Positions 1-57,854 of a stretch of DNA of 64,000 nucleotides are shown piece after piece (within the stretch, counting starts at the first letter, position 1; the number at the start of each line of letters is the position of its first letter). This stretch comes from Gracilinanus agilis (Eukaryota), in NCBI RefSeq assembly GCF_016433145.1, contig NC_058130.1:149651596-149715595 (forward strand), written 5' to 3'. The notes under the pieces are model-generated. The model saw only the letters and a list, made by a program, of their open reading frames with translations, had not been told where the DNA came from and did not search any database. A program made the position numbers and the translations under genes.

Positions 1-1076
1 AATTCATCCAGCTACCTGATTCATAAAGCACAGTTCTGCTCATGTCACTCCTCAGATGATGAAATATAAGTGGCTCCCTAAATGCCTTTAGGACAAAATA
101 TAAACACTTCTGTTTGGCACTTAATCTGACTTCAGTCTATCTTTTTCAGATCTATTACATATAACTCTCCTTTACACATCTACATTCCAGCCAAAGTGGC
201 TTACTTGACTGATGTTCCCATAGACACTATAATCAGTGATCCAATTCTGTGTTTCTATACCAAGTCATACTTCATAACTGAATATTCTACCCCTTTGCCT
301 CCTCTTTCTGGAATTCCTGGAATACCTCTATCTCAGTTTCAGTTTAAATACCATTTCCTTTTTAGAGGTCTTTTCTTTTTATCCTAACTGTTAATATTTA
401 TTAAAGCTTCCCCCCAAATGCTTTAACTATGTGGGTCTTATTAGAAGAAATAGATATTTCATAGCACAAACTATGCTGTGCTTCCTTAATCTTTTGATAG
501 TACTCTTTCCTCCCCATACTCTCTATAATATCTCTTGTATAAGGGCCCATGATCTGTGCATATGGTTTCTATAACACTGAAAAGACACATGGAGAAGACA
601 CCTTGGTTTCTCCATTCCAGGTATATTCTCTTCCCAATTAGATCATAAATCCTTTGAGGGCAAAGAGCTTATTTCATTCACTTCTAAAATCACTCCTTGC
701 CACCTATTCCTTGCATCATTGCCTAGCATAGTATTTTCCACACTGATGAGGACTGGTCCTCTTGATGTTATTGATCTATGTGACTTTATGGTGAAAAAAA
801 ACTCTCTCTAACAATGCAGGTTGACAAATTCTCTACAATTTATAGTTTTAGAGAGTTGTCTAGAGCAATGAGAAACAAAAGAAATTGTTAAAGGTAACAA
901 ATAATGGTCAAAAGTAGGACTTGAACTCTTGTCTTACTGGTTTTAAAGCCAACTTTCTCCATTATACTATGAGGCTTCTGACAGCTTAAGAAATATTTGT
1001 TTGATTTAACTGAACTTAAATAACTATGTTGTTTTCCTGAATTCAAACAAAATTATATTTGTTACACAATATAATG

Positions 1077-1195
1077 TAATAAGTTCCAAGTAATTGGGCC
1101 TCAGGGGCCCTGATCATGAAGTATAACAAAGTTTTCACTCTGTATATATCCAAGGCACAACTTTAAATTTCCTTAGAGACAAAGTAATCTCTAAG
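1077..1195 (+). promoter_or_regulatory. Candidate OR promoter module (paired homeodomain sites plus O/E-like sites) for the OR at 7742
   Basis: TAATAAGTT-ccaa-GTAATTGGGCCTCAGGGG, then 70 bp later CTTTAAATTTCCTTAGAGACAAAGTAATCTCTAAG. The same module with the same spacing lies upstream of all four intact ORs. Confidence 0.7.
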
Positions 1196-2355
1196 TACAG
1201 AAAGAGATTTAAATTGCTTTCTAGAATCTGTGACTGATTCTTTTGTGATTTGGAGGGCTGCTACTATGGGATCAGGACAGTGGTTCCCATTGTGTCTCTT
1301 GGCCAAATGAAATTTAGTTAAAAACAATCTACTTTCTTCCTTTATTTCCTATCCCTGAGCAACCTATACTTCCTTCAGTTCATTACAGTTGGAATAATTC
1401 TATTTTGGCACAATTTGAAAATTATTTCTAACAAAACTTAAAATTCAAATGTAAATAAGACCATAAAATTCTGAAGCAACATATTTTTCCATTAAAACTA
1501 ATTTTTGGTAACCCATCATCACTCTAAAGGAGCTTCCTTGTAGGAGGCAATCAGTTACTTGAGAAAGAAAATCAAGACAAAGCAATCTGCACTGTGTTGA
1601 AGTCTAAGAGGAAAGACAATCTCCCAACAAGAGGTAAATGGCTATAAAGACTAAAGACATAATCACTCAATATTCTGGTTCATAGAGATCAGTAAGGCTA
1701 AGCCTTTCTCTTTGTGTATGGACTTTTTCTTGATGCAAAGTGATTCTTGGACAAAATTGCAGATTCTTAGCTAGATCATCTAGACAGAGGGACAAGAGGG
1801 AGTGAGAAAATAAAAAAGTCAAAATTCTATAGAAAAAAGGAATGTACAAACTGAACAAAGATGAAGAACTAGGCCACTAATTTACACTTGCAGGAATTAA
1901 TACCCAAGTAAGGCCTGGAAATCCTGTTTTCACAGAGTATGGAGAGAATGATAAATATGGGAAAATTCATTAAATTATACAATATTTGTATTGCTCCCAT
2001 GTCAAGTATTATTTATGATCAAATAAAGTTGTTTGTTCTGTCTCCTAGAAGAGATAGTAGAGAAGGTGTAATAACATTTCTTATTTTTCTGGTTTTCAAA
2101 GACTGAAAAATGAATAAAAGAATGCATGAATAAAAAATCATTTCCTAAGTACTTGTTCTGTGCAGAACACTGTACTAAGCTCTGAGGATATAAATTGAAA
2201 GGATTGACAATCCCTTTCCCTAAGAAATTTAATTTCTAATATAAGGAAATGGTACAGGCTGGAGGTTTTAGGTACAAGTACAATAGAAAATCCACATGCT
2301 CCATAGGGTGCAGCAAACAAACAAACACATCTTCTTTAACTCTACTTCTGATAAC

Positions 2356-2359
<4 letters not shown>

Positions 2360-2396
<37 letters not shown>
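2360..2396 (+). repeat. (TG)n microsatellite
   Basis: Direct reading; the paralogous tract at ~20323-20372 is interrupted by TA units. Confidence 0.95.
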
Positions 2397-2400
<4 letters not shown>

Positions 2401-3615
2401 TGTGTTATTAAACTATTTGGTAGCACTAAGGACACTGGTGTTGAGAAATTTGTTTCTTTTTTCTTCAACGAATATTACTGCTGAAGGAGTAAGGGTTATA
2501 GCACCTGTAGAGGTAGTTTTCAAATGTCATCCCCACAAGTCTTGATTCCTTGGATGATGGTTTCAAGGGCTAGGCTAGAAGCAAGACCATCGGTCTGTTT
2601 CTTGAAGAGACGCCCCACCTAAGCAGCTAAAAAGCAAGATAATAGGCATGACGGATCCTAGTATCTATATTTCCAATGTAAAGTTAGTAATGATGAATAA
2701 TTCATAGATTATAGATATCTGAATGGAATAATTCTAAGACCCAGTGGTAGAGAACAGTGAATGAGGGGTCATAAATACACCTGAGACATCAAGATTAATT
2801 GTGTTTAGTGTAAAAGTAAGTAGATTTGTAATGCCCATGAAAACTTGAACTAAGTGATAAAATCCCTCCAAATCAAGAACGTGTAATTCTAAAGTAAGTT
2901 AACAACTGTTCCTTGTACTGGATATCAAAGTTTTGCCATACTGGGAACATTTGGTAGATGTAGAAAACAGAATATTTGAGGGCTCTGGTTCTGGTGACAA
3001 GACAGGCTAAAAGGTCAGATGGAAGATATGAGGTAATACTAACATCATTGTCTGTGCCCTAAGTATTGTCAGGATTCTTCTTAAAAATTTGATCTCTTTA
3101 TTCCTAGAAATAATATTTGTGGATACCAGGCATCTCCTACCTAATAGGTGGTATCAGTTGGTATATACAAAAATAACCTTTGCCCTAGGATCTGTACTTA
3201 TTAATTCTTCGTTTTTATATTCTTATGACTTCCTGCATCCTATACACTGCCTCTTTGCCAAGACCTGCCTTTGACTTATCTCTGTATTTGAATGCTTGCT
3301 TGACTGTAGTATGGTATCTGATTGCCTGAGTTCATACCATTGACATTCTTATCCCACCTTGAAGAAATGACTTGCTCAACAATAGACCTTCAACATAAAT
3401 CAAATTAGGGGCAAGACTGAAATGTACTTTGAGGCAAGGGAAGATAGTTCTGGGAGCAGTGTTCATTGAAAATAGATGCTTCTCTTCAATATAGCTAGGA
3501 TGGGCACAACAACTAGGAAAGTCATTAGTGTAACTGTGATAGAAAAGAGCAGAACGAAAAGAAAATTTTACACCTAGAACAGGTATTCCAGAATGTCACC
3601 GAAGACACTTTATAG

Positions 3616-3821
3616 CAGGGGTCGGCAACGTATGGCTCTCGAGCCATATCTGGCTCTTTTGAGGGCCAGATATGGTTCTTTCTGCAGGAGCCATAAAGTT
3701 AATTTTTTTCAGGCGCTGTTACAGGATCATGCACTGTGAGCACTGTATGACTCTCACAAAATTACCTTTTAAAAAATGTGGCATTTATGGCTCTCAAGGC
3801 CAAAAAGGTTGCCGACCCCTG
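3616..3821. mobile_element. Non-autonomous hAT (Charlie-like) MITE, 206 bp
   Basis: TIR CAGGGGTCGGCAAC...GTTGCCGACCCCTG; perfect 8-bp TSD CTTTATAG at 3608-3615 and 3822-3829. Confidence 0.93.
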
Positions 3822-4772
3822 CTTTATAGGAATGCATACGTATTCTCTTGTGAACAATAATATAACTTAAAAGCTCAATGTTTTTGACTAAAACTTGTTT
3901 TTATTTGTTTTATAGAACATTTCCCCCCCTCAGTTTTGAGGCTAAATAGTATATTCCTATATGCTAATTGAATTCTGATTGTGAATGAGGAAGACATGAA
4001 CTAATATTTCTAATAATCACTTAATAAATAATTGTTGATTTGTCTAGATAAGTGACTTTAATCATGTCCTTCTGCAATATTTGACACAGTTCTAAGAGAT
4101 CATTGAGTATTCTACTTCAGAGATGGCAGGTGTAAGGCTATACTACCAAGAATAATAGACTTTAGAGTATGTTGGAGTCTCTGGCCCTTTGTGAAAGAGT
4201 TCATTTCAAAAAGAAATTAAGTTTGTAGAGGACCGACTGAGAATATGTGGAAATAAGAAGAGCCATTATTAATATGGAAGCATCTAACTCTAAATCAGAA
4301 TGTGAGCCATTGCATGTAAGCATAGATATGTTCCAGGTATGGATCCCTGAACAATGCAAGGCTTTATTTTGAGCTACTACTCCAAATTGCAAGAGATTTT
4401 GGGTCACCTCTTGAGGAAAATCTCTGCTTAAAAATCGTATAGATAACTGAGAAATATTTCAATTCAAGGAATGGGTGACACTTAAGCCTTGTGCCTGGTA
4501 AGCAAGTTTAAGCACTTGGTTTGTCCTACAAAAAATGCCTCCTTAGAGATTCACCATAATAATGAAACTGGTAAGTGTATATATTTGACAGACAGAACTC
4601 CAACCCATTTCTACCCCGCTGGGTGCTCTTCACATAGCAAAAACAATACTTAGGCCAATGTGAAATGGTTCAAAGCCAAAGCATAGATGTGGGGAGAATA
4701 GGAGAGAGAGGAGAACAGTGGTGAAATGTCATTTTTACCGAAAATAATCCAGAGTTAAACTGATTAAGTGGG

Positions 4773-4905
4773 AAACCAGGTGGTGCAAGTGGATAGAATC
4801 CTGAGCCTGGAGTCAAGAAGACCTAAATAGAAATCTGGCCTTAGTCACTTATTAGCTATGTGACCATAAACAAGTTGCTTAATTATATTTATCTCAGTTT
4901 CCTCC
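4773..4905 (+). mobile_element. MAR1/MIR-type core SINE fragment (paralogue at ~22740-22872)
   Basis: ggtggtgcaagtggatagaatcctgagcctggagtcaagaagacct...gtgacc...ctcagtttcctc, the tRNA-derived core-SINE pattern. Confidence 0.7.
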
Positions 4906-5824
4906 TTCCAGATTTTTCCCCTTTCTGAAAGTAGATACAACAAACTGACTGATTCCTACTAGACTTATCTCCCATGATTGAGCTAATCAATCATATAACT
5001 ATAGATGCTACCAAAAGAGTCATCACAACTAGAAGGGGGTGGTAAGAGTATTAATGTGGTGACATAACTAGGGGGAGGGGGGTTGAAAGAAGATGTGTTT
5101 AATTAGAGAATAAAGAATATTTTAGGTTAACTCAAAAAGAGATGAGTATAAAACATTTAACCAAGGTTATCAATGGTATTTTTCTCTGTTTTTTAGCTTA
5201 GGGTGGTAGATAAAGTAGACTAGCAGTTCACAGGACAATATATGATCTATAATGCACTCCGTGCTCTCGATGTTGGTAAAGTGATCCCTAAAGGAATTCT
5301 ACACATTTACATTACTTTAGATTGTGATTATTAAAACAAGTTGATTTTTTCATAAACATGTGGCCAAGCCTGCTGAAACCACTTAACTAATACCATCTTG
5401 TCTTGGAGGCATCAGCAATCAAAGTGTCAGCATCCAAACTGAAGGTTCTGGTTTTGTAACTTGGCCATGAGGTAATTGCTGTCCATGGTGCTGATGTAGC
5501 TGGCCTAGAGGCATCTGACAGCTGACCAATGCAGAAAGATATAACATGCCAATGTCCAGCTATTACTTAAAGGACCCTTCAGCTGTTCCATCAGTCTGTG
5601 AAGCTGTCAGTGGTAGGTGCTAGACTTCAGGTCAGAAGAAAAAAAGTGGAATATTATCATTGTTAATTATCATCTATAGTATTTTCTATCAACTAGTTGA
5701 AGATTCTTCGGAGTGTTAAATTCTAGGTGTGTTGGTTAGACCTACCCCTTTGTAGCACACTTGTTACTAAACATGTGACCCTGAAGTGATTGGTGGTCAG
5801 AGTCTTTATTCATGGTGTTACGTG

Positions 5825-5826
<2 letters not shown>

Positions 5827-5872
<46 letters not shown>
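5827..5872 (+). repeat. (GT)23 microsatellite, same length as its paralogue at 23794-23839
   Basis: Counted 46 nt in both copies. Confidence 0.95.
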
Positions 5873-5873
<1 letters not shown>

Positions 5874-7741
5874 TGACTGTCTGGTTTTCCTGGGAAAGGT
5901 AGTTCTCATTCTCAGCTATAGGAATGATCCTCTTCTGGACCTAGTATACCTGAACTGATGATGTTCTATCTCAAAACACATCCTAATCAATGTGATAGAA
6001 AATCATTAGTTCAGGTACACTAGGTCCAGAAGAGAATCATTTACTTTCAAGAATGGGGATGCTCAATTTAAGCTATTCTCTGTGCACATATATAAGTTAA
6101 TCTCTAACTGCCATAGCTTCAATTAGGAAATGTAATGGTAGAAAGAAAATGATAGTAGGAATGAATTAAGGACCCTGAGAAATTCCTGAAAAAACTGTGG
6201 AAATGGAAATGCATTAGAAAACTATATGATCAAACACGTAGTACATTAGGGATATGATTGGGGTTTTGATGTTAAAGGGTTGTTCTACTTCAGATATGAA
6301 TAACATGGAAATAGGTTTTAAACAATGATACATTTATATCCCAGTGGAAACGCTTGTCAGATTCAGAAAAAGGGAGGAAAGCCTGGGGGGGGGGAAGGGA
6401 GAATCATGAATCTTGGGACCATGGAAAAATATTCTAAATAAAAAAGGGGGGAAATTCTTCCAGTATTCAGTTGAATTATTGGAGAAATTATGGGAGGAAT
6501 TGAATGAAGATTCGAGGATGGACTCACTGATTCATGGGTGAAAGGTATTTGTATTTAGGGTGTTTGTGTGTGAGTACATTTGCACCATACTGTCATATGA
6601 GTTAGGTCTAAAAGAAACATTGTAGATCATCTACTCCAGCCTCTCCTATTTTAAAGGTAAGGAAATTAAGGCATAGAGGCTACTGAATGGGTTAGAAATA
6701 TTTCTCATAAGATTCATTTCAGTGGCTCTAATCAAATAAACACATACACAAAGGTAAAGTAGGAAACCAATGATACTTTTTTTCCATTACCTTTTGTACT
6801 TTGTCCTTTTTTTCCAGCCCCAATTTTCATAATATCTTGCACAGACCTTTGGAAGCAAATGGATAATTTAATCTCTAAACATCAAATTTGACTAAATAAT
6901 TGTTCATAGATATTATAGTAAATGGAGAGTAATCAAAAAGTACTAGGAAGTACCTAAGGACAAATAAAAATGTTTGGTCTTGCCTCCTTTTCTCTTTTCC
7001 CTCACTAGATAAAGAAATTCTGTTTATCCACTCTGGTTGGAAGATATGTAAATTTTTCTCAGTCATATGAAGAGACTGGGGTACCAGTGTATCAAAGCAT
7101 ACCCAAGAGGGATTAGGATCCTATCAAACTAGATATAGAACCCTATGTTGGTCCATAACCCATTTTCATTCTAGTTAAAGGAATGTTTGTATGATCATAT
7201 TTATGGATAATGTAAATAATTTTATATTTGGTTAAAATGAGTTATTTACATGCACTTTCATGTTTATACTATATGAGGCATTAGTAAAAGTTTATGTGTT
7301 CATAAATATTCACTAAATATTTCCTAGTCTCATTCTGCCTTAATAGGAAATTGATGTATTTACTGGGAGGGTATTGAATATAACCCTGTATTGGGTCAGT
7401 CATTGTTTTACAAACCTTAATAATTCCTATGTCTAGAAAGCCTATTATGGGCTGCAATGTCATCACAGAGCTGTGTGTGTATGTGTGTGCATGTGTGCGT
7501 GTGCGTGTGTGAATATGTGTTTGTTTAATACTGCTGGGGTAAATATGAAAGCACTTTGACAGAGTTGGGAGAATGGGCACTGTACAAAATTTAGCTTGGA
7601 TATTGGAAATTTTTAATTAATGGGCATATGTCAAATACAGGATTCCCAAAAGTATAAGTGATATTTGAATTCATTATCATATGATAAATTTGATCCCTTG
7701 TCTCCTTATCTGAAATATTGTAGGTGGAAGAGAGAGAACAA

Positions 7742-8680
7742 ATGGAAAGACAAAATAAGACCACTGTGACTATATTCTTTCTTCATGGCCTTGATGGGTA
7801 TCCTGTATTTTACTTTATTTTTTTTCTGCTATGCCTTATCATGTACATTGTCATCCTATTGGGCAACAGTTTCCTCATTACAGTTAGCATCCTGGACTCT
7901 CACCTCCATACTCCCATGTACTTCTTTCTCAGTAATCTCTCTTTTCTGGACATCTGCTACACATCTTCTTCAATTCCCATGTTACTGGTGAACTTCCTTT
8001 CAGAGGAAAAATCTATTTCTTTCATTGGATGTGGGGTACAAATGTTCTTTTCATTTGCCATGGGAGCCACAGAGTGTGTGCTCTTGGCTATAATGGCATA
8101 TGACCGTTATTTGGCCATTTGCAAACCTCTGAGGTACCCTATCATCATGAACAAAGGACTCGGTGTGAAATTGGTGACAAGTTGCTGGATGGCAGGTGGA
8201 TTTACCTCAGTGATACAAACCACCTTAACTATGAAGTTGTCATTTTGTGGGAATATCATTGATTATCTTACATGTGAGATCCTGGCTGTGTTGAAATTGT
8301 CCTGTGATGATATTTCCCTCAATGTGACAGTAATGATGATATCAAACATCTTCATAATAGTTATTCCAGTAGTATTTATATTCATCTCCTACTTTTTCAT
8401 CCTCATTACCATCCTGAGAATCAATTCTGCTGAAGGGAGGAAAAAAACCTTTTCTACATGCTCATCCCATCTGACTGTAGTGATCATGTTTTATGGGACC
8501 ATCTTATTCATGTACATGAAGCCTGAATCCAAAGACTCCCATGCAACAGATGAGATGATTGCTCTCTTCTATGCTGTGGTCATTCCCATGCTGAACCCCA
8601 TCATTTATAGTCTAAGGAACAAAGATGTGAAAGCAGCTGTGAAAAAGCTCAGCAAAAATATCTTCTCACAGAGAATATGA
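7742..8680 (+). CDS. Olfactory receptor, class II family 13 (OR13C-like), 312 aa, intact
   Basis: Motifs [35 protein letters not shown] and [12 protein letters not shown]; N-K-T sequon at residue 5. The true start is the ATG at 7742; the ORF-track GTG at 7724 directly follows a splice acceptor (AG 7722-7723). Confidence 0.95.
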
Positions 8681-9665
8681 GATACTATATATATCAATTA
8701 TGCAAAATGAATAAATAATAAACTATCCACATTCAGAACCATTGTTTCAAAGTCTTATTATCTCCCTCTGCCACTGACACTCTTTAGCATAGCCACATAT
8801 AGTAAAGAATAGTCATGGAAATGACTAGAATGAAGGATATTAAATATAAACTTTTTTTATTCTGTTGGAAAATAAAGGATTTAAGACTCAAAGACGTGAG
8901 ACCCTGATGATGGAACCAGGAATAAAAATGTAGAAAGTGGAAACAATATCAGAAGAAAACTTGCTAACAATTAATGCTGCCATGAAATGAAATGTGTTAT
9001 CTTGAGAGGAAATGAGTTGCCCCTAATTGAAAACTTCCAAGCATACTTGAGTAACCACTTGTTGTGTGTATTATAATGGAGGTTTCTTTGGGGTCTGACT
9101 TGAACTAAATGGCTGCTATAATGATAATAATATTGATAGCTAGTATTTCTATATTTTTAAAATTTTTCAAAATGCTTTACACAATTTATATTTAACTCTT
9201 CACATTGTTCTTTGAAGTATGTCCATTTTTATAAATGAGGTTGAGAAGGTAAATTACTTGCCTCTGGTCATACAGTGAGTGTTTAAGGTTAGATTTAAAC
9301 TCAGGTCTTTTGTCTCCATCCACAATATGACCTAATTGCCTAGATTCACTACAGTTTCCATATTCTGGGATTTGTGAATCTCTTTAATTAGAGAAATTCT
9401 ATATCTTGACCACATTTGTCCAACTTTATTTTGCATGATTTAACAAGTTAGTTAACTGCAAACAAGCACCTGTCAGTTTAGTCTTATTATTTTTATATAC
9501 ATATGTATGTATGTATGTATGTGTATATATATAAATATATATATGTGTATATATAAATATATATATATATATCATGTTCAGAATTGATTTCCAATTCTGA
9601 AAAATTTTTCCTAAGGTTTCTTACCAAGAAGTTGTTTCTTTTTTCTTGTTCATAAATGCAAATTG

Positions 9666-9852
9666 TTTTTTAAACCCTTACCTTCCATCTTGGATCTAAT
9701 ACTATGTATTGGTTCCAAGGAAGAAGAGTGGTAAGGGCTAGGCAATGGGGATTAAGTGCTTGCCCAGGGTCACACATCTAGGAAGTGTCTGAGGCCAGAT
9801 TAGAATTTAGAACCTCCCATCTCTAGGTCTGGTTCTCAATCCACTGAGCCAC
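9666..9852 (-). mobile_element. SINE1_Mdo-type SINE (shared with duplicate copy B at 27597-27778)
   Basis: Reverse complement reads ...ctcagtggattgagaaccagacctagagatgggagg...gtgtgaccctgggcaag...ggaaggtaagggtttaaaaaa. Confidence 0.85.
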
Positions 9853-10849
9853 AAAACTTACCGCATAAATGCAAATTCTAATCCTTTTTCATGTTCAAAC
9901 TTGGGTCTCATTTTTGGGGGGTCAAAATTGCCTCTCCTCTGTAGGTCACAGAGATACCTTTATGGTTATGTGCTTTCCTGTGAAATCTTGGATAATTTCT
10001 TACATGTTAAATTTGTTTATCTGATTAGATCTTATTTTTCAGAGATCAGGTCTCATTTGATATTAATTATGTACCTTGTGTTCACTTCAGTATTTAAAAC
10101 ACAAATTCCACTTAATAAATATTTGTGTATTTATAGGAAAATTTTTAAATTTGTTTTCATGAATGGTGCAATACCCTGGGAAGATTACTTTGTGTGGCCA
10201 GGTACATCTTATTTCAAAATTTATTGTTGTCATTATGACAATCATTAAAAATAATAGTTTTTATAAAGATAACAGAAAATTATTTATATAAATTTTGACA
10301 TTTGGCAAAATAGTTTCAAATCACCATGATATGGGTTCAAATTTCCAGCTCAGTTATTACTCAAGTGACCTCACTCAAGGCTCTTATTCTATCTGAGCCC
10401 TCTCTTTTCTTCTTTATAGGTGGTTAATGACATAATTTTAGAATTCTCTTCCAGCTCTAAATCTATAGTCCTATAAAATTCGAGCTTCAGTTAAGCCTTC
10501 TAACCATCCTGCAAAGTAGTTTTTATTATACTTATTTTTATTATAAAATGTTTATTATATTTAGTCATTGTTTATTATACTTATTTTATAGAAAAGGAAA
10601 TTAATGTTTAGAGAGGTGACTTGTCCCAAAGTCAGATAGTACATGGGAAATTCACGACTACAAGTCAGCTCTTATAACTCTAAGTTAGTGAGAGATATGA
10701 CATTCTTGCAACCAGGTGTTCATGTTCACTGCATGAAGGTCCACACCTTCCCCAAACACACTTCTTACCTATATTTTAAATGAAAACTGATATTGCCTTT
10801 GCCATTCAAAAGACTTTGTGATGGGTACAATTTTTAACTACCATATCCT

Positions 10850-11392
10850 CAACTCTTTCTCTTCCAATCCTAATAATGAACCACCCCCAACTGCCTAAGC
10901 AAAAGTCACCCACTTTCCTTTCTAGCATGCTGTATTATCTTATAACTCATGTTTCCTAATCCTACCCAAACACAGTGAAAAATAGCCTATTCCTACCACT
11001 TTGCCTTTTGGGAAACCTATATTCTGTGGTTAACAAGTTTCCCTTCCTCTTTAGATCTCTTTCGAATTTCTTCTTCCTTCTTTTGGTAAACCAAAAAAAT
11101 TGTTTTCCCAAGCGAGACATTAAACTTACTTTATAGTATTGAACATATTTCATATCACCATTAAACAGAGGTCTGGGATAATAATCAGGCATACTCTTTA
11201 CTCTAAATGCCAATTCCTGATCCTTCACCTACTGTGATCACTCAGCAATATTTCTCTTTAGAGATTCGCTTGATAAAGATAGATCAGTCAACTTTTATAT
11301 TTCTGGTAATTATCTGCTAGTCCTCAGAACATTCTTCCTCCTTTAAAATTATAGTACTTGACTTAAAGTCTTCATTTCCCCCTCAATTAATT
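10850..11392 (+). mobile_element. Ancient L2-like LINE fragment (paralogue ~30700-32100, interrupted there by an LTR)
   Basis: Degenerate translation near 31560 (HFAFWETH...FPSSLDLFL) resembles the start of the L2 endonuclease domain; heavily decayed. Confidence 0.5.
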
Positions 11393-12263
11393 AATTAAAT
11401 TATTTAGCTAATCAGAAGGGCAATAATAGATAACAAAACTAAAGAGTATATAAATGATCATGGCTAAGATCAGACATGGAGAATAGCTGAGCATATACAT
11501 CTCCCTACTTTTTGACAGAAGTAGATGGTTATGGTTGTGGAATATTGCATATAATTTCAGAACCAGTTGATATGCTGTTCATTTTTACTGAATTGTTCTC
11601 TTTTAAAAGTAAATTCTTTATTATAAGGGATCTCTTAATGGGAGGGGACAGAGTGTAAAGCTATGCTCAGAAGTCAAAATGATGCAAAACCCAAAGAATC
11701 AATTAAAATGTTTTAAGTGTCAAAAGTTGGATTTGAACTAGGTATTCTTGACTCCAAAAGCAATAATCTATCCTTTTAATAAGACTAAAGAAGCAGAAAG
11801 CTGTAGTGAGAAAAGCTCTGGATTGAGAGATAGAATGCTAGTTATGCTATTTTCAGGCTTGGCAACCCAAAACAAGTAAAACTGTACTGCTTTTCACTGG
11901 CATTTCCCATATATGAAATTACCCAACTCAGTTTGGGAAAGGTTTTGAAACCTGTTAGAAATAAATTAATATTGTTTCTGATTTCCACTATATTAATTTT
12001 ATAATGTGATTATGCTAGACTGATTTTTAATAACTGCCTTAAAAATGCTCCCTGTACTAGTCTGAATGGGATGAGAGCGGTGATTAAAAGACAGTGGTGA
12101 CTTTGAACTAACTCCCCTCTTTCCCTCACACATTTGTTGCTAACCAGTTTAACCTGGGACCCTTGCTTTGCTTACCTATTAACAGAGAATTACCTTGATC
12201 GGGGCTTCTCCCCAAGGGACAGTTCTTTTATTCTTGCTTTTTCTTGTAAAAATTAAAGGTGAT

Positions 12264-17698: not shown

Positions 17699-19067
17699 AA
17701 AGGCAGAAACAAGAGATGTTGTGCAAGCAGATGTAGTGAAACTAGATAATTGATTGGATATGAGTAAGAGAAAATGAAAAGTTGATCATGACTTTTAGTT
17801 TTTGATCTGCATTATTAGAAGGCTGTTGATACTCTGTAGATTCGGGGAAATTAGAAAGAGGAGCTAATCTTTTTTGAAAAGTTACTGCCATAGTTCATAC
17901 CCTAATCATTTTACATTTAACTAATCTAGCTTTTACAATATGTTCCTAATTCAACTCCTTGCATCTAATTTGTCTCTCTGTTCTCCAATTCATCCAGCTA
18001 CCTGATTTATAAAGCACAGTTCTGCTCATGTCACTCCTCAGATGATGAAATATAAGTGGCTCCCTAAATGCCTTTAGGACAAAATACCTCTGTTTGGCCC
18101 TTAATCTGACTATAGTCTATCCTTTTCAGATTTATTATGTATTAATCCACTTTAATCATTCTACATTCCAGCCAGACTGGATTACTTGACTGATGTTCCC
18201 ATATACACTATAGTCAATGATCCAATTCTGTGCTTCTGCCCCAAGTCATATTTCATACCTGAATATTCTACGTCTTTTCCTCCTCTTCCTGGAATTCCTG
18301 GAATACCTATCTCTATTTCAGTTTCAGTTTAAATACCATTTCCTTTTAGAGGTCTTTTCTTTTTTATCCTAGCTGTTAGTATTTATTCAAGCTTCCCCCC
18401 AAATGCTTTAATTATGTGGGTCTTATTAGAAGAAATAGATATTTCATAGCACAAACTATGCTGTGCTTCCTTAATCTTTTGATAGTACTCTTTCCTCCCC
18501 ATACTCTCTATAATATTTCTTGTATAAAGGTTTAAGATGTGGGCATATGGTTTCTATAACACTGAGAAGACAAATGGAGAAGACACTTTGATTTCCATTC
18601 CAGGCACATTCTCTTCTCAATTGGATCATAAATCCCTTGAGGGCAAAGGAGCTTATTTCATTCATTTTTCAAATCATTCTTTGCCACCTATTCTTTGCAT
18701 CATTGCCTAGCATAGTATTTTTCACACTAATGAAGACTGGTCCTCTTGATGTTATTGATCTCGGTGACTTTATGGTGAGAAACTTCTCTCTAACAATGCA
18801 GGTTGACAAATTCTCTACAATTTATAGTTTTAGAGAATTGTCTAGAGCAATGAGAGGCAAAAGAAGTTGTTAAAGGTCACAAAGAAATAATCTGTCAAAG
18901 GTGGGACTTGAACTCTTATCTTTCTGCTTTTAAAGGCAACTTTCTATCACCATTATACTATGTGGCTTCTGAGAGCTTAAGAAATATTTGTTTGATTTAA
19001 TTGAACTTAAATATCTATGTTGTTGTCTTGAATTAAAACATAGTTATATTTGAAACATAGTATAATA

Positions 19068-19186
19068 TAATAAGTTCAAAGTAATTGGGCCTTAGGGGCC
19101 CTGATCATGAAGTATCATAAACTTTTCACTTTGTACATATCTAAGGCAGAACTTTAAATAACCTCAGAGACAAAGTAATCTCAAAG
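19068..19186 (+). promoter_or_regulatory. Candidate OR promoter module for the OR at 25714
   Basis: TAATAAGTT-caaa-GTAATTGGGCCTTAGGGG, then 70 bp later CTTTAAATAACCTCAGAGACAAAGTAATCTCAAAG. Confidence 0.7.
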
Positions 19187-21582
19187 TATAACAAGATCTT
19201 TAAACTGCCTTCTAGAACCCATGACTAATTCTATTGTGATTTGGAGGGCCTCTACTATGGGGTCAGGACAGTGGTTCCCATTGTGTCCCTTGGCCAAATG
19301 AAGTTTAGTAAAAAGCAAATTAATTTTCTTTTCTTCCAGTGTTTCCTATCCCTGAGGAAGCTAGGCTTCCTTCAGGTCATCACACAGTTGAAATAAGTCT
19401 ATATCTGCAAAATTTGAAAATTATTTCTAACAAAACATACAACTGAAATGCAAATAAGATCATAAAATTCTGAAGCAACATATTTTTCCATTAAAACTAA
19501 TTTTTGGAAAACCATCAAAACCTGAAGAAGCTTCCTTATAGGAAGCAATCAGTTACTTGAGAAAGAAAATCAAGACAAAGCAATCTGCACTGTGTTGAAG
19601 CCTAAGAGGAAAGACAATCTCCCAAATAGAGGTAAATGGCTATAAAGACTAAAGACATAATCACTCAATGCTCTGAAATATTCTGGTTCATAAGAATCAA
19701 TGAAGCTAAGCCATTCTCTTTGTGTATGGAATTTTTCTTGATGCAAAGGCATTCTTGGGACACAAATGCAGATTCTTATCTTGATCACTAGGCAGAGGGA
19801 ACAAGAGGGAATGAGATAATAAAAAAGTCAGAATTCTGTAGAAAAAAGGAATGTACAAACTGAACAAAGATGAAGAACTGGGTCAATAATTTACACCTGC
19901 AGGAATTAATACCCAGGTGAGGCCTGGAAATCCTGTTTTGACAGAGTATGGAGAGAATGATGAATATAGAAAATTAATTAAATTATACAATGTTTGTATT
20001 TCTCACATATCAAGTATTATTTATGATCAACTAAAGTTGTTTGTTCTGTCTCCTAGAAGAGATAGTAGAGAAGGTGGAATAACATTTCTTATTTTTCTGG
20101 TTTTCAGAGACTGAAAAATGAATAAATGAATGCATGAATAAAAAACATTTCTTAAGTACTTGTAAGGACTGACAATCCCTTTCCCTAAGAAATTTAATTT
20201 CTAATATAAGGAAATGATGTAGGCTGGAGGTTTTAGGTACAAGTACAATAGAAAATCCACCTGCTCCATAGGGTGCAGCAACCAAACAAACACATCTTCT
20301 TTAACTCTACTTCTGATAACACTGTGTGTGTGTGTATGTGTGTGTGTGTGTATGTGTGTGTATGTGTGTGTGTTATTAAACTATTTGGTAGCACTAAGGA
20401 CACTGGTGTTGAGAAATTTGTTTCTTTTTTCTTCAACAAATATTACTGCTGAAGGAGTAAGGGTTATAGCACCTGTAGAGGTAGTTTTCAAATCTCATCC
20501 CCACAAGTCTTGATTCCTTGGATGATGATTTCAAGGGCTAGGCTAGAAGTAAGACCATCAGTCTGTTTCTTGAAGAGACGCCCACCTAAGCAGCTAAAAA
20601 GCAAGATAATAGGCATGACGGATCCTAGTATCTATATTTCCAATGTAAAGTTAGTAATGATGAATAATTCATAAATTATAGATATCTGAATGGCATAATT
20701 CTAAGACCCAGTGGTAGAGAACAGTGAATGAGGGTTCATAAATACACCTGAGACTTCAAGATTAATTGTGTTTAGTGTAAAAGTAAGTAGATTTGTAATG
20801 CCCATGAAAACTTGAACTAAGTGATAAAATCCCTCCAAATCAAGAACGTGTAATTCTAAAGTAAGTTAACAACTGTTCCTTGTACTGGATATCAAAGTTT
20901 TGCCATACTGGGAACATTTGGTAGATGTAGAAAACAGAATATTTGAGGGCTCTGGTTCTGGTGACAAGACAGGCTAAAAGGTCAGATGGAAGATATGAGG
21001 TAATACTAACATCATTGTCTGTGCCCTAAGTATTGTCAGGATTCTTCTTAAAAATCTGATCTCTTTATTCCTAGAAATAATATTTGTGGATACCAGGCAT
21101 CTCCTACCTAATAGGTGGTATCAGTTGGTATATACAAAAATAACCTTTGCCCTAGGATCTGTACTTATTAATTCTTCGTTTTTATATTCTTATGACTTCC
21201 TGCATCCTATACACTGCCTCTTTGCCAAGACCTGCCTTTGACTTATCTCTGTATTTGAATGCTTGCTTGACTGTAGTATGGTATCTGATTGCCTGAGTTC
21301 ATACCATTGACATTCTTATCCCACCTTGAAGAAATGACTTGCTCAACAATAGACCTTCAACATAAATCAAATTAGGGGCAAGACTGAAATGTACTTTGAG
21401 GCAAGGGAAGATAGTTCTGGGAGCAGTGTTCATTGAAAATAGATGCTTCTCTTCAATATAGCTAGGATGGGCACAACAACTAGGAAAGTCATTAGTGTAA
21501 CTGTGATAGAAAAGAGCAGAACGAAAAGAAAATTTTACACCTAGAACAGGTATTCCAGAATGTCACCGAAGACACTTTATAG

Positions 21583-21788
21583 CAGGGGTCGGCAACGTAT
21601 GGCTCTCGAGCCATATCTGGCTCTTTTGAGGGCCAGATATGGTTCTTTCTGCAGGAGCCATAAAGTTAATTTTTTTCAGGCGCTGTTACAGGATCATGCA
21701 CTGTGAGCACTGTATGACTCTCACAAAATTACCTTTTAAAAAATGTGGCATTTATGGCTCTCAAGGCCAAAAAGGTTGCCGACCCCTG
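21583..21788. mobile_element. hAT MITE, identical paralogue of 3616-3821
   Basis: Same TIRs and the same CTTTATAG TSD. Confidence 0.93.
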
Positions 21789-23791
21789 CTTTATAGGAAT
21801 GCATACGTATTCTCTTGTGAACAATAATATAACTTAAAAGCTCAATGTTTTTGACTAAAACTTGTTTTTATTTGTTTTATAGAACATTTCCCCCCCTCAG
21901 TTTTGAGGCTAAATAGTATATTCCTATATGCTAATTGAATTCTGATTGTGAATGAGGAAGACATGAACTAATATTTCTAATAATCACTTAATAAATAATT
22001 GTTGATTTGTCTAGATAAGTGACTTTAATCATGTCCTTCTGCAATATTTGACACAGTTCTAAGAGATCATTGAGTATTCTACTTCAGAGATGGCAGGTGT
22101 AAGGCTATACTACCAAGAATAATAGACTTTAGAGTATGTTGGAGTCTCTGGCCCTTTGTGAAAGAGTTCATTTCAAAAAGAAATTAAGTTTGTAGAGGAC
22201 CGACTGAGAATATGTGGAAATAAGAAGAGCCATTATTAATATGGAAGCATCTAACTCTAAATCAGAATGTGAGCCATTGCATGTAAGCATAGATATGTTC
22301 CAGGTATGGATCCCTGAACAATGCAAGGCTTTATTTTGAGCTACTACTCCAAATTGCAAGAGATTTTGGGTCACCTCTTGAGGAAAATCTCTGCTTAAAA
22401 ATCGTATAGATAACTGAGAAATATTTCAATTCAAGGAATGGGTGACACTTAAGCCTTGTGCCTGGTAAGCAAGTTTAAGCACTTGGTTTGTCCTACAAAA
22501 AATGCCTCCTTAGAGATTCACCATAATAATGAAACTGGTAAGTGTATATATTTGACAGACAGAACTCCAACCCATTTCTACCCCGCTGGGTGCTCTTCAC
22601 ATAGCAAAAACAATACTTAGGCCAATGTGAAATGGTTCAAAGCCAAAGCATAGATGTGGGGAGAATAGGAGAGAGAGGAGAACAGTGGTGAAATGTCATT
22701 TTTACCGAAAATAATCCAGAGTTAAACTGATTAAGTGGGAAACCAGGTGGTGCAAGTGGATAGAATCCTGAGCCTGGAGTCAAGAAGACCTAAATAGAAA
22801 TCTGGCCTTAGTCACTTATTAGCTATGTGACCATAAACAAGTTGCTTAATTATATTTATCTCAGTTTCCTCCTTCCAGATTTTTCCCCTTTCTGAAAGTA
22901 GATACAACAAACTGACTGATTCCTACTAGACTTATCTCCCATGATTGAGCTAATCAATCATATAACTATAGATGCTACCAAAAGAGTCATCACAACTAGA
23001 AGGGGGTGGTAAGAGTATTAATGTGGTGACATAACTAGGGGGAGGGGGGTTGAAAGAAGATGTGTTTAATTAGAGAATAAAGAATATTTTAGGTTAACTC
23101 AAAAAGAGATGAGTATAAAACATTTAACCAAGGTTATCAATGGTATTTTTCTCTGTTTTTTAGCTTAGGGTGGTAGATAAAGTAGACTAGCAGTTCACAG
23201 GACAATATATGATCTATAATGCACTCCGTGCTCTCGATGTTGGTAAAGTGATCCCTAAAGGAATTCTACACATTTACATTACTTTAGATTGTGATTATTA
23301 AAACAAGTTGATTTTTTCATAAACATGTGGCCAAGCCTGCTGAAACCACTTAACTAATACCATCTTGTCTTGGAGGCATCAGCAATCAAAGTGTCAGCAT
23401 CCAAACTGAAGGTTCTGGTTTTGTAACTTGGCCATGAGGTAATTGCTGTCCATGGTGCTGATGTAGCTGGCCTAGAGGCATCTGACAGCTGACCAATGCA
23501 GAAAGATATAACATGCCAATGTCCAGCTATTACTTAAAGGACCCTTCAGCTGTTCCATCAGTCTGTGAAGCTGTCAGTGGTAGGTGCTAGACTTCAGGTC
23601 AGAAGAAAAAAAGTGGAATATTATCATTGTTAATTATCATCTATAGTATTTTCTATCAACTAGTTGAAGATTCTTCGGAGTGTTAAATTCTAGGTGTGTT
23701 GGTTAGACCTACCCCTTTGTAGCACACTTGTTACTAAACATGTGACCCTGAAGTGATTGGTGGTCAGAGTCTTTATTCATGGTGTTACGTG

Positions 23792-23840
<49 letters not shown>

Positions 23841-25713
23841 TGACTGTCTGGTTTTCCTGGGAAAGGTAGTTCTCATTCTCAGCTATAGGAATGATCCTCT
23901 TCTGGACCTAGTATACCTGAACTGATGATGTTCTATCTCAAAACACATCCTAATCAATGTGATAGAAAATCATTAGTTCAGGTACACTAGGTCCAGAAGA
24001 GAATCATTTACTTTCAAGAATGGGGATGCTCAATTTAAGCTATTCTCTGTGCACATATATAAGTTAATCTCTAACTGCCATAGCTTCAATTAGGAAATGT
24101 AATGGTAGAAAGAAAATGATAGTAGGAATGAATTAAGGACCCTGAGAAATTCCTGAAAAAACTGTGGAAATGGAAATGCATTAGAAAACTATATGATCAA
24201 ACACGTAGTACATTAGGGATATGATTGGGGTTTTGATGTTAAAGGGTTGTTCTACTTCAGATATGAATAACATGGAAATAGGTTTTAAACAATGATACAT
24301 TTATATCCCAGTGGAAACGCTTGTCAGATTCAGAAAAAGGGAGGAAAGCCTGGGGGGGGGGGGGGAAGGGAGAATCATGAATCTTGGGACCATGGAAAAA
24401 TATTCTAAATAAAAAAGGGGGGAAATTCTTCCAGTATTCAGTTGAATTATTGGAGAAATTATGGGAGGAATTGAATGAAGATTCGAGGATGGACTCACTG
24501 ATTCATGGGTGAAAGGTATTTGTATTTAGGGTGTTTGTGTGTGAGTACATTTGCACCATACTGTCATATGAGTTAGGTCTAAAAGAAACATTGTAGATCA
24601 TCTACTCCAGCCTCTCCTATTTTAAAGGTAAGGAAATTAAGGCATAGAGGCTACTGAATGGGTTAGAAATATTTCTCATAAGATTCATTTCAGTGGCTCT
24701 AATCAAATAAACACATACACAAAGGTAAAGTAGGAAACCAATGATACTTTTTTTCCATTACCTTTTGTACTTTGTCCTTTTTTTCCAGCCCCAATTTTCA
24801 TAATATCTTGCACAGACCTTTGGAAGCAAATGGATAATTTAATCTCTAAACATCAAATTTGACTAAATAATTGTTCATAGATATTATAGTAAATGGAGAG
24901 TAATCAAAAAGTACTAGGAAGTACCTAAGGACAAATAAAAATGTTTGGTCTTGCCTCCTTTTCTCTTTTCCCTCACTAGATAAAGAAATTCTGTTTATCC
25001 ACTCTGGTTGGAAGATATGTAAATTTTTCTCAGTCATATGAAGAGACTGGGGTACCAGTGTATCAAAGCATACCCAAGAGGGATTAGGATCCTATCAAAC
25101 TAGATATAGAACCCTATGTTGGTCCATAACCCATTTTCATTCTAGTTAAAGGAATGTTTGTATGATCATATTTATGGATAATGTAAATAATTTTATATTT
25201 GGTTAAAATGAGTTATTTACATGCACTTTCATGTTTATACTATATGAGGCATTAGTAAAAGTTTATGTGTTCATAAATATTCACTAAATATTTCCTAGTC
25301 TCATTCTGCCTTAATAGGAAATTGATGTATTTACTGGGAGGGTATTGAATATAACCCTGTATTGGGTCAGTCATTGTTTTACAAACCTTAATAATTCCTA
25401 TGTCTAGAAAGCCTATTATGGGCTGCAATGTCATCACAGAGCTGTGTGTGTATGTGTGTGCATGTGTGCGTGTGCGTGTGTGAATATGTGTTTGTTTAAT
25501 ACTGCTGGGGTAAATATGAAAGCACTTTGACAGAGTTGGGAGAAATGGGCACTGTACAAAATTTAGCTTGGATATTGGAAATTTTTAATTAATGGGCATA
25601 TGTCAAATACAGGATTCCCAAAAGTATAAGTGATATTTGAATTCATTATCATATGATAAATTTGATCCCTTGTCTCCTTATCTGAAATATTGTAGGTGGA
25701 AGAGAGAGAACAA

Positions 25714-26652
25714 ATGGAAAGACAAAATAAGACCACTGTGACTATATTCTTTCTTCATGGCCTTGATGGGTATCCTGTATTTTACTTTATTTTTTTTCTG
25801 CTATGCCTTATCATGTACATTGTCATCCTATTGGGCAACAGTTTCCTCATTACAGTTAGCATCCTGGACTCTCACCTCCATACTCCCATGTACTTCTTTC
25901 TCAGTAATCTCTCTTTTCTGGACATCTGCTACACATCTTCTTCAATTCCCATGTTACTGGTGAACTTCCTTTCAGAGGAAAAATCTATTTCTTTCATTGG
26001 ATGTGGGGTACAAATGTTCTTTTCATTTGCCATGGGAGCCACAGAGTGTGTGCTCTTGGCTATAATGGCATATGACCGTTATTTGGCCATTTGCAAACCT
26101 CTGAGGTACCCTATCATCATGAACAAAGGACTCGGTGTGAAATTGGTGACAAGTTGCTGGATGGCAGGTGGATTTACCTCAGTGATACAAACCACCTTAA
26201 CTATGAAGTTGTCATTTTGTGGGAATATCATTGATTATCTTACATGTGAGATCCTGGCTGTGTTGAAATTGTCCTGTGATGATATTTCCCTCAATGTGAC
26301 AGTAATGATGATATCAAACATCTTCATAATAGTTATTCCAGTAGTATTTATATTCATCTCCTACTTTTTCATCCTCATTACCATCCTGAGAATCAATTCT
26401 GCTGAAGGGAGGAAAAAAACCTTTTCTACATGCTCATCCCATCTGACTGTAGTGATCATGTTTTATGGGACCATCTTATTCATGTACATGAAGCCTGAAT
26501 CCAAAGACTCCCATGCAACAGATGAGATGATTGCTCTCTTCTATGCTGTGGTCATTCCCATGCTGAACCCCATCATTTATAGTCTAAGGAACAAAGATGT
26601 GAAAGCAGCTGTGAAAAAGCTCAGCAAAAATATCTTCTCACAGAGAATATGA
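25714..26652 (+). CDS. Olfactory receptor, class II family 13 (OR13C-like), 312 aa, protein identical to 7742-8680
   Basis: ORF-track translation is identical and no nucleotide difference was spotted in the CDS; acceptor AG at 25694-25695. Confidence 0.95.
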
Positions 26653-27596: not shown

Positions 27597-27778
27597 TTTT
27601 TTAAACCCTTACCTTCTGTCTTGGTATAAATACTATGTATTGGTTCTAAGGAAAAAGAGTGGTAAGGGATAGGCAATGGGATTAAGTGATTTTCCCAGGG
27701 TCACACATCTAAGAAGTGTCTGATGCCAGATTCAAACCATCTCTAGGCCTGGCTCTTAATCCACTGAGCCACCCAGCT
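27597..27778 (-). mobile_element. SINE1_Mdo-type SINE at the paralogous position to 9666-9852
   Basis: Same SINE sequence with a short internal deletion; same flanks. Confidence 0.85.
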
Positions 27779-57845: not shown

Positions 57846-57854
57846 TTCAGTCAC

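What the first reader, a model, noticed from the sequence alone, without database searches (positions are those of the whole stretch)
2791..9209. About 6.4 kb near-perfect homogenisation of an OR gene inside a roughly 10%-diverged duplication
Seen: only four differences were found between 2791-9209 and 20758-27181. Even the (GT)23 microsatellite has identical length, while the flanks on both sides are about 90% identical. Established: interlocus gene conversion homogenises tandem paralogues, but reported tracts are usually much shorter. Inference: a very recent long-tract conversion, or double unequal crossover, copied the whole intron, CDS and 3' end. An assembly artefact (one copy's reads used for both loci) is a real alternative.
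Basis: partly seen in the sequence, partly recalled or inferred. Interest (0 to 1): 0.72.

Follow-up and report, generated by a model that had tools for sequence, protein, structure and literature searches.

The report
Smell-receptor gene copies recently homogenised
Two neighbouring copies of an opossum smell-receptor gene are printed as almost identical over 6.4 kb while the DNA on both sides differs by 10-13%; this is most likely ordinary gene conversion between tandem duplicates, but the genome was assembled from 100-base reads, which cannot tell such copies apart, so the exact figure is unreliable.

Summary
Window 2789-9208 and 20756-27181 differ at four places: two transitions and two run-length indels. 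The left flank differs at 10.7% of sites and the right flank at 12-13%. Chance is excluded (P about 1e-294). The (GT)23 arrays are identical.

Identity falls in steps: about 3% divergence at 2002-2788 and about 6% at 9209-9491. This suggests repeated homogenisation centred on an intact 312-aa OR13-type receptor gene. I rate interlocus gene conversion (concerted evolution) at about 0.7.

- **Tract length is not unusual.** Human segmental duplications show a mean tract of 6.26 kbp and whole-gene conversions (PMC10172114).
- **The genome is almost certainly the Gracilinanus agilis assembly.** It was built from 2x100-bp co-barcoded reads with Supernova and GapCloser (PMC8390783).
- **The assembler could not separate the centre.** The tract has exact blocks of up to 3.3 kb. 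Both substitutions lie within 450 bp of its edges.
- **True divergence may be about 0.3% rather than 0.03%.** The central 5.7 kb may be one consensus printed twice.

The scan noted a similar conversion between OR genes elsewhere in this genome (s1-189290). This is a real but ordinary feature, and its precision is uncertain.

The parts
1..11393 (+). Copy A of the old tandem duplication. It is cut by the window start, so its left end is unknown.
   Evidence: Co-linear BLAST segments against 17987-31966 at 84-90% identity outside the tract.
17987..31966 (+). Copy B of the old tandem duplication. It carries extra sequence at about 28046-29995 (includes an L1 fragment) and about 30823-31520.
   Evidence: 28505-29856 matches other L1 pieces of the window at 82-84%.
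2789..9208 (+). Near-identical tract, copy A: most of intron 1, the CDS, the 3' UTR signals and about 290 bp beyond.
   Evidence: 2 substitutions and 2 run-length indels in 6,420 sites. Likelihood segmentation places the boundaries at 2788/2789 and 9221-9274.
20756..27181 (+). Near-identical tract, copy B.
   Evidence: 97.2% of the tract's 48-mers are shared between the copies, against 0-10% in the flanks.
2002..2788 (+). Left intermediate zone, matching B 20010-20755. It is 3.1% diverged and holds a 42-bp indel (2157-2198) and an imperfect (TG)n at 2360-2405.
   Evidence: For 2002-2788, segmentation gives 23 of 743 sites different. For 2199-2788, 18 of 589 sites differ: lower than the flank rate at P=4e-11 and higher than the tract rate at P=6e-30.
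9209..9491 (+). Right intermediate zone, matching B 27181-27465. It is 6.4% diverged and ends at a TA-rich simple repeat (9494-9572).
   Evidence: 18 of 283 sites differ. P=3e-4 against the right flank rate and 0.017 against the left flank rate. This zone is only suggestive.
7742..8680 (+). Intact olfactory receptor CDS, copy A: 312 aa, OR13-type, first ATG to stop. A probable splice acceptor (...ttgtag|G) lies at about 7722.
   Evidence: ORF. Pfam 7tm_4 E=4e-50. 94-97% identical to Monodelphis domestica 'olfactory receptor 13D1-like/13C3-like' proteins. Sequence read.
25714..26652 (+). Intact olfactory receptor CDS, copy B, encoding the identical protein.
   Evidence: One search gives identical translations. 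No difference falls in the CDS.
5827..5872 (+). (GT)23 microsatellite in copy A. Copy B has the same array at 23794-23839.
   Evidence: TRF finds 23.0 copies with 100% matches in both.
3089..3089 (+). Difference 1: T in A, C in B (21056). It lies 300 bp from the left edge of the tract.
6375..6384 (+). Difference 2: G-run of 10 in A against 14 in B (ending near 24355).
7571..7571 (+). Difference 3: AA in A against AAA in B (25543). It lies about 170 bp upstream of the ATG.
8760..8760 (+). Difference 4: A in A, G in B (26732). It lies 80 bp after the stop codon and 449 bp from the right edge of the tract.
1077..1195 (+). Upstream promoter module of copy A (B: 19068-19186). It lies outside the homogenised tract, in the roughly 10% diverged zone.
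Evidence: In the A/B alignment of 1050-1230, 151 of 181 positions are identical, with a conserved core.

Best explanation
An old tandem duplication of about 11 kb or more, period 18 kb, carries two copies of an OR13-type olfactory receptor gene. Its flanks are now 10-13% diverged.

The middle 6.4 kb of the two copies holds most of the intron, the single coding exon and the 3' end. It has been overwritten from one copy to the other by non-reciprocal homologous repair, that is, interlocus gene conversion. The template would be the misaligned paralogue on the sister chromatid or the homologue.

The stepped profile is 10-13%, then 3-6%, then about 0%. It suggests that this was not one isolated event. 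It looks like the latest of several, forming an island of concerted evolution whose edges have shrunk inward as the flanks diverged. The last event is very recent compared with the duplication: the tract has at most about 0.3-2% of the flank divergence.

The consequence is two identical receptor proteins, each behind its own promoter. The two promoters are about 10% diverged.

Shown here: the identity profile, the co-linearity, the intact and identical CDS, and the absence of assembly gaps nearby.

Inferred: the mechanism, the recurrence, and that both copies physically exist as printed. The printed 99.97% is probably an upper bound on the true identity, because the assembly method cannot separate the copies in the centre.
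For: **Sharp identity change on both sides.**
- There are 2 substitutions in 6,420 sites, against 10.7% on the left flank and 12% on the right, in one co-linear alignment (P about 1e-294).
- A patch bounded by diverged homologous sequence on both sides is the signature of conversion. It is not the signature of a single unequal crossover.

**Evidence for earlier events.**
- Intermediate zones of 3.1% (2002-2788; for 2199-2788, P=4e-11 against the flank rate and 6e-30 against the tract rate) and 6.4% (9209-9491) indicate earlier, wider events.
- The best BIC models have 4-5 segments.

**Selection cannot explain it.** The tract is mostly intron, includes microsatellites, and is uniformly identical.

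**No sign of insertion or RNA-mediated copying.**
- There is no extra sequence at the edges.
- The tract starts 1.6 kb inside the intron.
- It ends about 290 bp past the last poly(A) signal.

**The assembly is continuous here.**
- There are no N runs within 21 kb of either copy.
- No third copy of the tract's 48-mers occurs in the window.

**A de Bruijn assembler collapses only near-identical sequence.**
- It kept the 3% zone separate.
- So the interior must truly be far more similar than the flanks.

**Family pattern fits concerted or lineage-specific evolution.** The three Monodelphis paralogues differ from each other by 6-10 aa, but from the window protein by 10-18 aa.

**The tract size is typical of IGC.** The mean is 6.26 kbp, with whole genes converted (PMC10172114).

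**A similar case exists in this genome.** This is a lead only.
Against: **The assembly is short-read only.**
- It was made from 2x100-bp stLFR reads with Supernova and GapCloser.
- Exact blocks in the tract are 300, 3295, 1187, 1188 and 449 bp long.
- Neither reads nor short-insert pairs can assign the centre to a copy.
- The copies lie 18 kb apart, so co-barcoded long fragments usually cover both (inference).

**The differences sit where the method predicts.**
- Both substitutions lie within 300 and 449 bp of the tract edges (chance about 0.02).
- This is what one expects if only the edges could be resolved and the centre was printed from one consensus.
- The equal (GT)23 length is therefore not independent evidence.

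**Direction and ancestry are untested.**
- Donor and acceptor cannot be told apart.
- No orthologous DNA was available to show that the ancestral interiors were diverged.

**Conversion between 10% diverged sequences is inefficient.** This is general knowledge. A single new 6.4-kb event is unlikely unless the interior had been kept similar all along.
Confidence: 0.7

Rival explanations
1. Assembly artefact in the strong sense. The real genome does not hold two near-identical 6.4-kb tracts at these two loci.

For example, a scaffold gap inside one copy was filled by GapCloser with reads of the other copy. Or a graph loop was unrolled once too often. In either case one locus really has a diverged, rearranged or missing interior.
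For: - The assembly is short-read only, with a gap-closing step.
- It has 8.25% N and a contig N50 of 57 kb.
- The tract's centre cannot be resolved with these data.
- The only substitutions lie within read-pair reach of the edges.
- The other two differences are run-length indels, a typical kind of assembly or polishing noise.
Against: - A diverged interior would be unique sequence. A de Bruijn assembler would assemble it directly, so no gap would arise to be filled.
- The assembler did separate the 3% zone.
- All four junctions between flank and tract are printed. Each needs reads that join copy-specific bases to tract sequence (inference).
- No N run lies near either copy.
- Four differences exist, so the two copies were not simply pasted from one string.
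- The stepped profile, with a normal mix of transitions and transversions in the intermediate zones, looks evolutionary.
Confidence: 0.15
2. Two successive unequal crossovers rather than one non-reciprocal conversion. The first makes a triplication with a hybrid copy. The second deletes back to two copies, leaving an A-derived patch in B or the reverse.
For: The end product is the same as that of a conversion: a patch of identity bounded on both sides. Copy-number change by unequal exchange is common in OR clusters (general knowledge).
Against: - It needs two rare events, each in register.
- At least one breakpoint must lie at the edge of diverged sequence.
- It does not explain the nested intermediate zones any better.
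- The window shows no trace of a third copy.
Confidence: 0.08
3. The conversion is real but the printed identity is inflated. The true copies differ at roughly 0.3-1%, and the assembler printed one consensus for the unresolvable central 5.7 kb.

This is a variant of the best explanation, not exclusive of it. It is given apart because it changes the dating about tenfold.
For: - Paralogue differences in the resolvable edges number 2 in 749 bp, or 0.27% (95% interval 0.03-0.96%).
- The central 5,670 bp has 0 substitutions.
- 97% of the tract's 48-mers are shared.
- The animal was wild-caught and diploid. The near-absence of any printed variation between copies is therefore itself suspicious.
Against: With only two substitutions, their position near the edges may be chance (P about 0.02). 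It may also reflect patchy mismatch repair of heteroduplex DNA at the tract ends, or a nested, still younger event.
Confidence: 0.4

Closest known systems
Interlocus gene conversion in human segmental duplications, including whole-gene 'repositioning' (Vollger et al. 2023, PMC10172114)
   Same: Both are kilobase-scale non-reciprocal transfers between paralogous duplicates. The human mean tract is 6.26 kbp. Whole genes are copied into another copy's regulatory context.
   Different: The human events were called between duplicates more than 90% identical, from phased long-read assemblies of many haplotypes. Here the flanks are 87-90% identical, there is one short-read assembly of one animal, and no donor or acceptor can be assigned.
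Gene conversion and concerted evolution in mammalian olfactory receptor clusters. From my own memory: the primate chromosome-17 OR cluster (Sharon et al. 1999) and the mouse MOR28 cluster (Nagawa et al. 2002). I did not find either in the paper library.
   Same: Neighbouring OR paralogues have homogenised coding regions and diverged surroundings. This creates receptors with identical or near-identical proteins under separate promoters.
   Different: Here the tract reaches far beyond the coding exon, covering about 5 kb of intron, and is printed as almost free of differences.
Human fetal globin genes HBG1/HBG2 (Slightom et al. 1980; from my own memory)
   Same: It is a tandem duplication with a converted central block, a sharp boundary and older diverged flanks. 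Simple (TG)n sequence lies near the boundary.
   Different: The globin tract is about 1.5 kb and ends at the (TG)n. Here the (TG)n at 2360-2405 lies about 385 bp outside the sharp edge, and the (GT)23 lies mid-tract. No boundary role is shown.
Collapsed or mis-resolved repeats in short-read and linked-read assemblies
   Same: The repeat is longer than the read and pair span, the two copies fall within one long fragment, and a gap-closing step was used.
   Different: A typical collapse removes a copy or leaves N gaps. Here both copies are printed in a gap-free stretch of 48 kb, with copy-specific junctions and four differences.

Membership tests
Interlocus (non-allelic) gene conversion tract | A segment of paralogous sequence significantly more alike than the homologous sequence flanking it on both sides | tested here: met
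   0.03% divergence against 10.7% on the left and 12% on the right. P about 1e-294. Segmentation supports sharp boundaries.
Interlocus (non-allelic) gene conversion tract | Replacement in register: co-linear, with no added sequence, target-site duplication or new junction at the edges | tested here: met
   One co-linear alignment runs across both edges. The boundary sequences were read directly.
Interlocus (non-allelic) gene conversion tract | Tree conflict: the tract groups paralogues within the species, while the flanks group orthologues across species or date the duplication as older | tested here: inconclusive
   Only proteins of Monodelphis domestica were available. Its three paralogues are closer to each other (6-10 differences) than to the window protein (10-18). 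This fits but does not prove the conflict.
Interlocus (non-allelic) gene conversion tract | Both copies physically exist as printed (spanning reads, 2x depth) | not testable with these tools
Interlocus (non-allelic) gene conversion tract | Non-reciprocal transfer with an identifiable donor and acceptor | not testable with these tools
   This needs an outgroup or population haplotypes.
Assembly artefact (collapsed repeat printed twice, or gap filled from the paralogue) | The repeat cannot be resolved by the data type used | tested here: met
   The reads are 2x100 bp and the pipeline was Supernova plus GapCloser. Exact blocks reach 3,295 bp. 97% of 48-mers are shared. The link between genome and paper rests on the matching scaffold length of 801.37 Mb.
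Assembly artefact (collapsed repeat printed twice, or gap filled from the paralogue) | N gaps or seams next to the suspect stretch | tested here: not met
   The only N runs are at 48628-48765 and 63198-63596. Closed gaps leave no trace, so this test is weak.
Assembly artefact (collapsed repeat printed twice, or gap filled from the paralogue) | Differences between the copies only where read pairs can reach a copy-specific base | tested here: met
   Both substitutions lie 300 and 449 bp from the edges. The central 5.67 kb has only two run-length indels. There are only two data points.
Assembly artefact (collapsed repeat printed twice, or gap filled from the paralogue) | Read depth or long reads contradict the printed structure | not testable with these tools
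Olfactory receptor gene (class II, OR13-type) | An intact single-exon 7TM open reading frame that matches the OR profile and has OR motifs | tested here: met
   312 aa. Pfam 7tm_4 E=4e-50. The motifs [17 protein letters not shown] and [12 protein letters not shown] are present. It is 94-97% identical to M. domestica 'olfactory receptor 13D1-like/13C3-like'.

The most novel reading that the evidence does not exclude
The tract really is 99.9% or more identical, and the event happened within the last tens of thousands of generations. It may then still be polymorphic in wild Gracilinanus agilis.

That would give a natural experiment. One receptor protein would sit behind two promoters that are about 10% diverged, with about 1.6 kb of diverged proximal intron. 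The effect of cis context on olfactory receptor choice and neuron number could be measured with the protein held constant.

It would also document a self-maintaining conversion island between flanks already below 90% identity.
Probability: 0.3. Interest if true: 0.35.

Novelty: new member of a known kind. Interest (0 to 1): 0.2.

Why it matters
If real, this is a clean marsupial example of concerted evolution acting on a whole olfactory receptor gene. The profile has three layers, so successive events can be dated relative to one another. It also leaves two identical receptors under different promoters.

None of this is new in kind. Conversion in OR clusters and kilobase-scale tracts are both established.

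The practical lesson concerns method. In this genome, which was assembled from 100-base linked reads, any pair of paralogues printed as more than 99.9% identical over more than about 0.5 kb, and lying within one long fragment of each other, has an identity that the data could not measure. Counts of 'very recent' duplications or conversions drawn from this assembly should be treated as upper bounds on identity.

Tried and rejected
After that I sent no DNA of this stretch to any collection search. Read laying could therefore not be used.

**Readings rejected**
- Selection or ultraconservation as the cause. The tract is mostly intron with microsatellites and is uniformly identical.
- A young transposon inserted in both copies. 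The tract is co-linear with older homology, holds the OR gene and has no target-site duplications.
- RNA-templated copying of the transcript. The tract starts 1.6 kb inside the intron and runs about 290 bp past the last poly(A) signal.
- Haplotypes falsely placed in tandem. The flanks are 10-13% diverged, a 6.6-kb unique spacer lies between the copies, and there is no N between them.

**Steps that led nowhere or were skipped**
- Literature on OR-specific conversion (MOR28, OR37, marsupials) gave nothing usable in the held library.
- A bacterial promoter and terminator scan was irrelevant to a mammalian locus and is disregarded.
- My first count of CpG context was unreliable and is not used.
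- I did not run the large protein searches. The family was clear from Pfam and the exact look-up.

Full report
**1. The observation**

The window is AT-rich mammalian sequence. It has two N runs, at 48628-48765 and 63198-63596. A self-comparison shows a co-linear duplication: A 1-11393 against B 17987-31966, with a period of 17,986 bp. Its core, 2195-9534 against 20160-27510, is 99.18% identical. The rest is 84-90% identical.

In a global alignment, A 2789-9208 and B 20756-27181 differ at four places only:
- T/C at 3089/21056
- G10 against G14 after 6384
- AA against AAA at 7571
- A/G at 8760/26732

Both (GT)23 arrays are perfect and of equal length. With 2 substitutions in 6,420 sites against a flank rate of 10.2-10.7%, chance is excluded (P about 1e-294).

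**2. Anatomy**

A likelihood segmentation of the substitution pattern prefers four to five segments:
- left flank 1-2001, 10.7%
- an intermediate zone 2002-2788, 3.1%
- the tract 2789 to about 9221-9274, 0.03-0.05%
- right flank, about 12%

For 2199-2788, the left intermediate zone differs strongly from both neighbours (P=4e-11 and 6e-30). It holds a 42-bp indel (2157-2198) and an imperfect (TG)n. A right intermediate zone at 9209-9491 (6.4%) is only suggestive (P=3e-4 or 0.017, depending on the flank rate used). It ends at a TA-rich simple repeat. So the profile is stepped, not a single jump.

Each copy carries an intact 312-aa open reading frame, at 7742-8680 and 25714-26652, and the two proteins are identical. 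The protein matches the olfactory-receptor profile (7tm_4, E=4e-50). None of the four differences lies in the CDS.

A probable splice acceptor sits just upstream of the ATG. The family's promoter module, noted earlier by the scan at 1077-1195 (s1-170993), lies in the 10% zone. In the A/B alignment of 1050-1230, 151 of 181 positions are identical.

The tract therefore covers most of the intron but not its first 1.6 kb or so, the coding exon, all poly(A) signals (8710-8921), and about 290 bp more. Copy B has extra sequence at about 28046-29995, including an L1 fragment, and at about 30823-31520. Two further intact OR genes lie at 39692-40675 (+) and 56913-57854 (-).

**3. Whose genome, and how it was made**

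The exact protein is on record on a single contig of 801,374,265 bp. Its 90% cluster otherwise holds only Monodelphis domestica proteins named olfactory receptor 13D1-like or 13C3-like. A second OR of the window is closest to Monodelphis (10 differences) and further from Australasian marsupials (15-21 differences).

The paper on the Gracilinanus agilis genome gives a longest scaffold of 801.37 Mb (PMC8390783). I infer that the window comes from that assembly.

Its methods matter:
- one wild-caught male
- stLFR co-barcoded reads and short-insert reads, both 2x100 bp
- assembly with Supernova 2.1.1
- gaps closed with SOAPdenovo2 GapCloser
- scaffolding with Hi-C
- no long reads were used
- contig N50 is 57 kb and 8.25% of the assembly is N

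**4. What that means for the finding**

Inside the tract the exact blocks are 300, 3295, 1187, 1188 and 449 bp long. Of the tract's 48-mers, 97% are shared by both copies, against 0-10% in the flanks.

Reads of 100 bases and short-insert pairs cannot assign the centre to a copy. The copies lie 18 kb apart, so co-barcoded long fragments will usually hold both (inference).

Both substitutions lie within 300 and 449 bp of the tract edges, that is, within reach of a read pair anchored on a copy-specific base. The central 5,670 bp shows no substitution at all. Under a uniform spread the chance of that placement is about 0.02.

This is what one expects if only the edges could be resolved and the centre was printed from one consensus. 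The difference density in the resolvable edges is 2 in 749, or 0.27% (95% interval 0.03-0.96%). That may be a better estimate of true divergence than 0.03%. The equal (GT)23 length is therefore not independent evidence.

The same reasoning limits the artefact. A de Bruijn assembler merges only what is already near-identical. It kept the 3% zone apart. A 10% diverged interior would be unique sequence that assembles by itself, leaving no gap to fill. All four junctions between copy-specific sequence and the tract are printed. No N run lies within 21 kb. The two copies are not one pasted string, since four differences exist.

I conclude that a tract of strongly reduced divergence (about 1% or less) is very probably real. 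Its printed perfection is not established.

**5. Mechanism**

A patch of identity bounded by diverged homologous sequence on both sides, in register and without added sequence, is the signature of interlocus gene conversion. In this process a break in one copy is repaired from the misaligned paralogue. Two successive unequal crossovers would give the same product but need two rare events.

These alternatives are rejected on the anatomy (section 2):
- selection
- a shared young transposon
- RNA-templated copying
- tandemly misplaced haplotypes

Recombination between sequences 10% apart is inefficient (general knowledge). Given that and the stepped profile, the most economical model is recurrent conversion that has kept the interior similar since the duplication. 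The convertible island would shrink inward as its edges diverge.

Relative ages follow from Jukes-Cantor distances:
- flanks: 0.11-0.14
- left intermediate zone: 0.031
- right intermediate zone: 0.067
- tract: 0.0003

The last event thus falls in roughly the last 0.3% of the time since the duplication, or the last 2% if the 0.27% figure is nearer the truth. With a generic mammalian rate of 1-2.2e-9 per site per year (my assumption), that is roughly 0.07-0.16 Myr, or about 0.6-1.3 Myr on the 0.27% figure. The duplication itself would be tens of Myr old.

At the protein level, the three Monodelphis paralogues are closer to each other (6-10 differences) than to the window protein (10-18). That fits either concerted evolution or lineage-specific duplication and does not decide between them.

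**6. Comparison with what is known**

In 102 human haplotypes, putative IGC events average 6.26 kbp, the top tenth exceed 14.4 kbp, and 171 genes are converted whole into another copy's context (PMC10172114).

Conversion among clustered OR genes has long been described. I recall the primate chromosome-17 cluster and the mouse MOR28 cluster, but I could not retrieve those papers here. The scan itself noted OR exons homogenised by conversion elsewhere in this genome (s1-189290; unchecked by me).

The finding is a new instance of a known kind.

I neither retried it nor sent DNA of this stretch to any collection search afterwards. Read laying could not be used.
No independent assembly and no orthologous DNA could be compared.
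- I did not touch the N runs.
- The large protein searches were not needed and were not run.

**8. Verdict**

The most likely explanation is real, recurrent interlocus gene conversion (about 0.7). There is a substantial chance (about 0.4, not exclusive of the first) that the printed identity is inflated by the assembly method. A strong assembly artefact has a chance of about 0.15.

The phenomenon is ordinary and the interest is low. The main value is the caution about near-identical paralogues in this assembly.

Noticed in passing
window 1-107 (B: 17987-18087): The first roughly 100 bases of the window differ from copy B at a single site (1 of 101), inside a flank that is otherwise about 11% diverged. 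This could be a conserved element. It could also be the right end of another homogenised tract that runs off the window start. The left end of the duplication is also cut by the window edge.
   Followed up: partly
window 28046-29995 and 30823-31520: Copy B has about 1.9 kb of extra sequence, including an L1 fragment at 28505-29856, and about 0.7 kb more, relative to copy A. These are insertions after the duplication or deletions in A. Other L1 pieces 79-89% identical to one another lie at 14136-15853, 32575-33459, 43534-44080 and 62214-63195.
   Followed up: no
window 39692-40675 (+) and 56913-57854 (-): Two more intact OR genes of the same family lie here. They are about 60% identical in protein to the duplicated one. 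The second is exactly on record and is 90% or more identical to 'olfactory receptor 2K2-like' proteins of wombat, wallaby, bilby, possum and Monodelphis. That is unusually well conserved across marsupials for an OR.
   Followed up: partly
window 63198-63596: A 399-base N run sits inside an L1 element, with endonuclease-like ORF2 sequence on the minus strand on its far side.
   Followed up: no
window 3616-3821 and 21583-21788 against 28296-28504 (inverted): A roughly 200-bp dispersed repeat lies inside the tract. An 89% identical inverted copy sits next to the L1 insertion of copy B. It is probably a SINE-like element and was not classified.
   Followed up: no
about 11.5 kb before the window start (outside the window): An earlier first-stage note (s1-154079) reports an OR 'half-gene cassette' with an identical front and a diverged back just upstream of this window. 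If it is true, it would be another partial conversion or duplication in the same cluster. I could not read that sequence.
   Followed up: no
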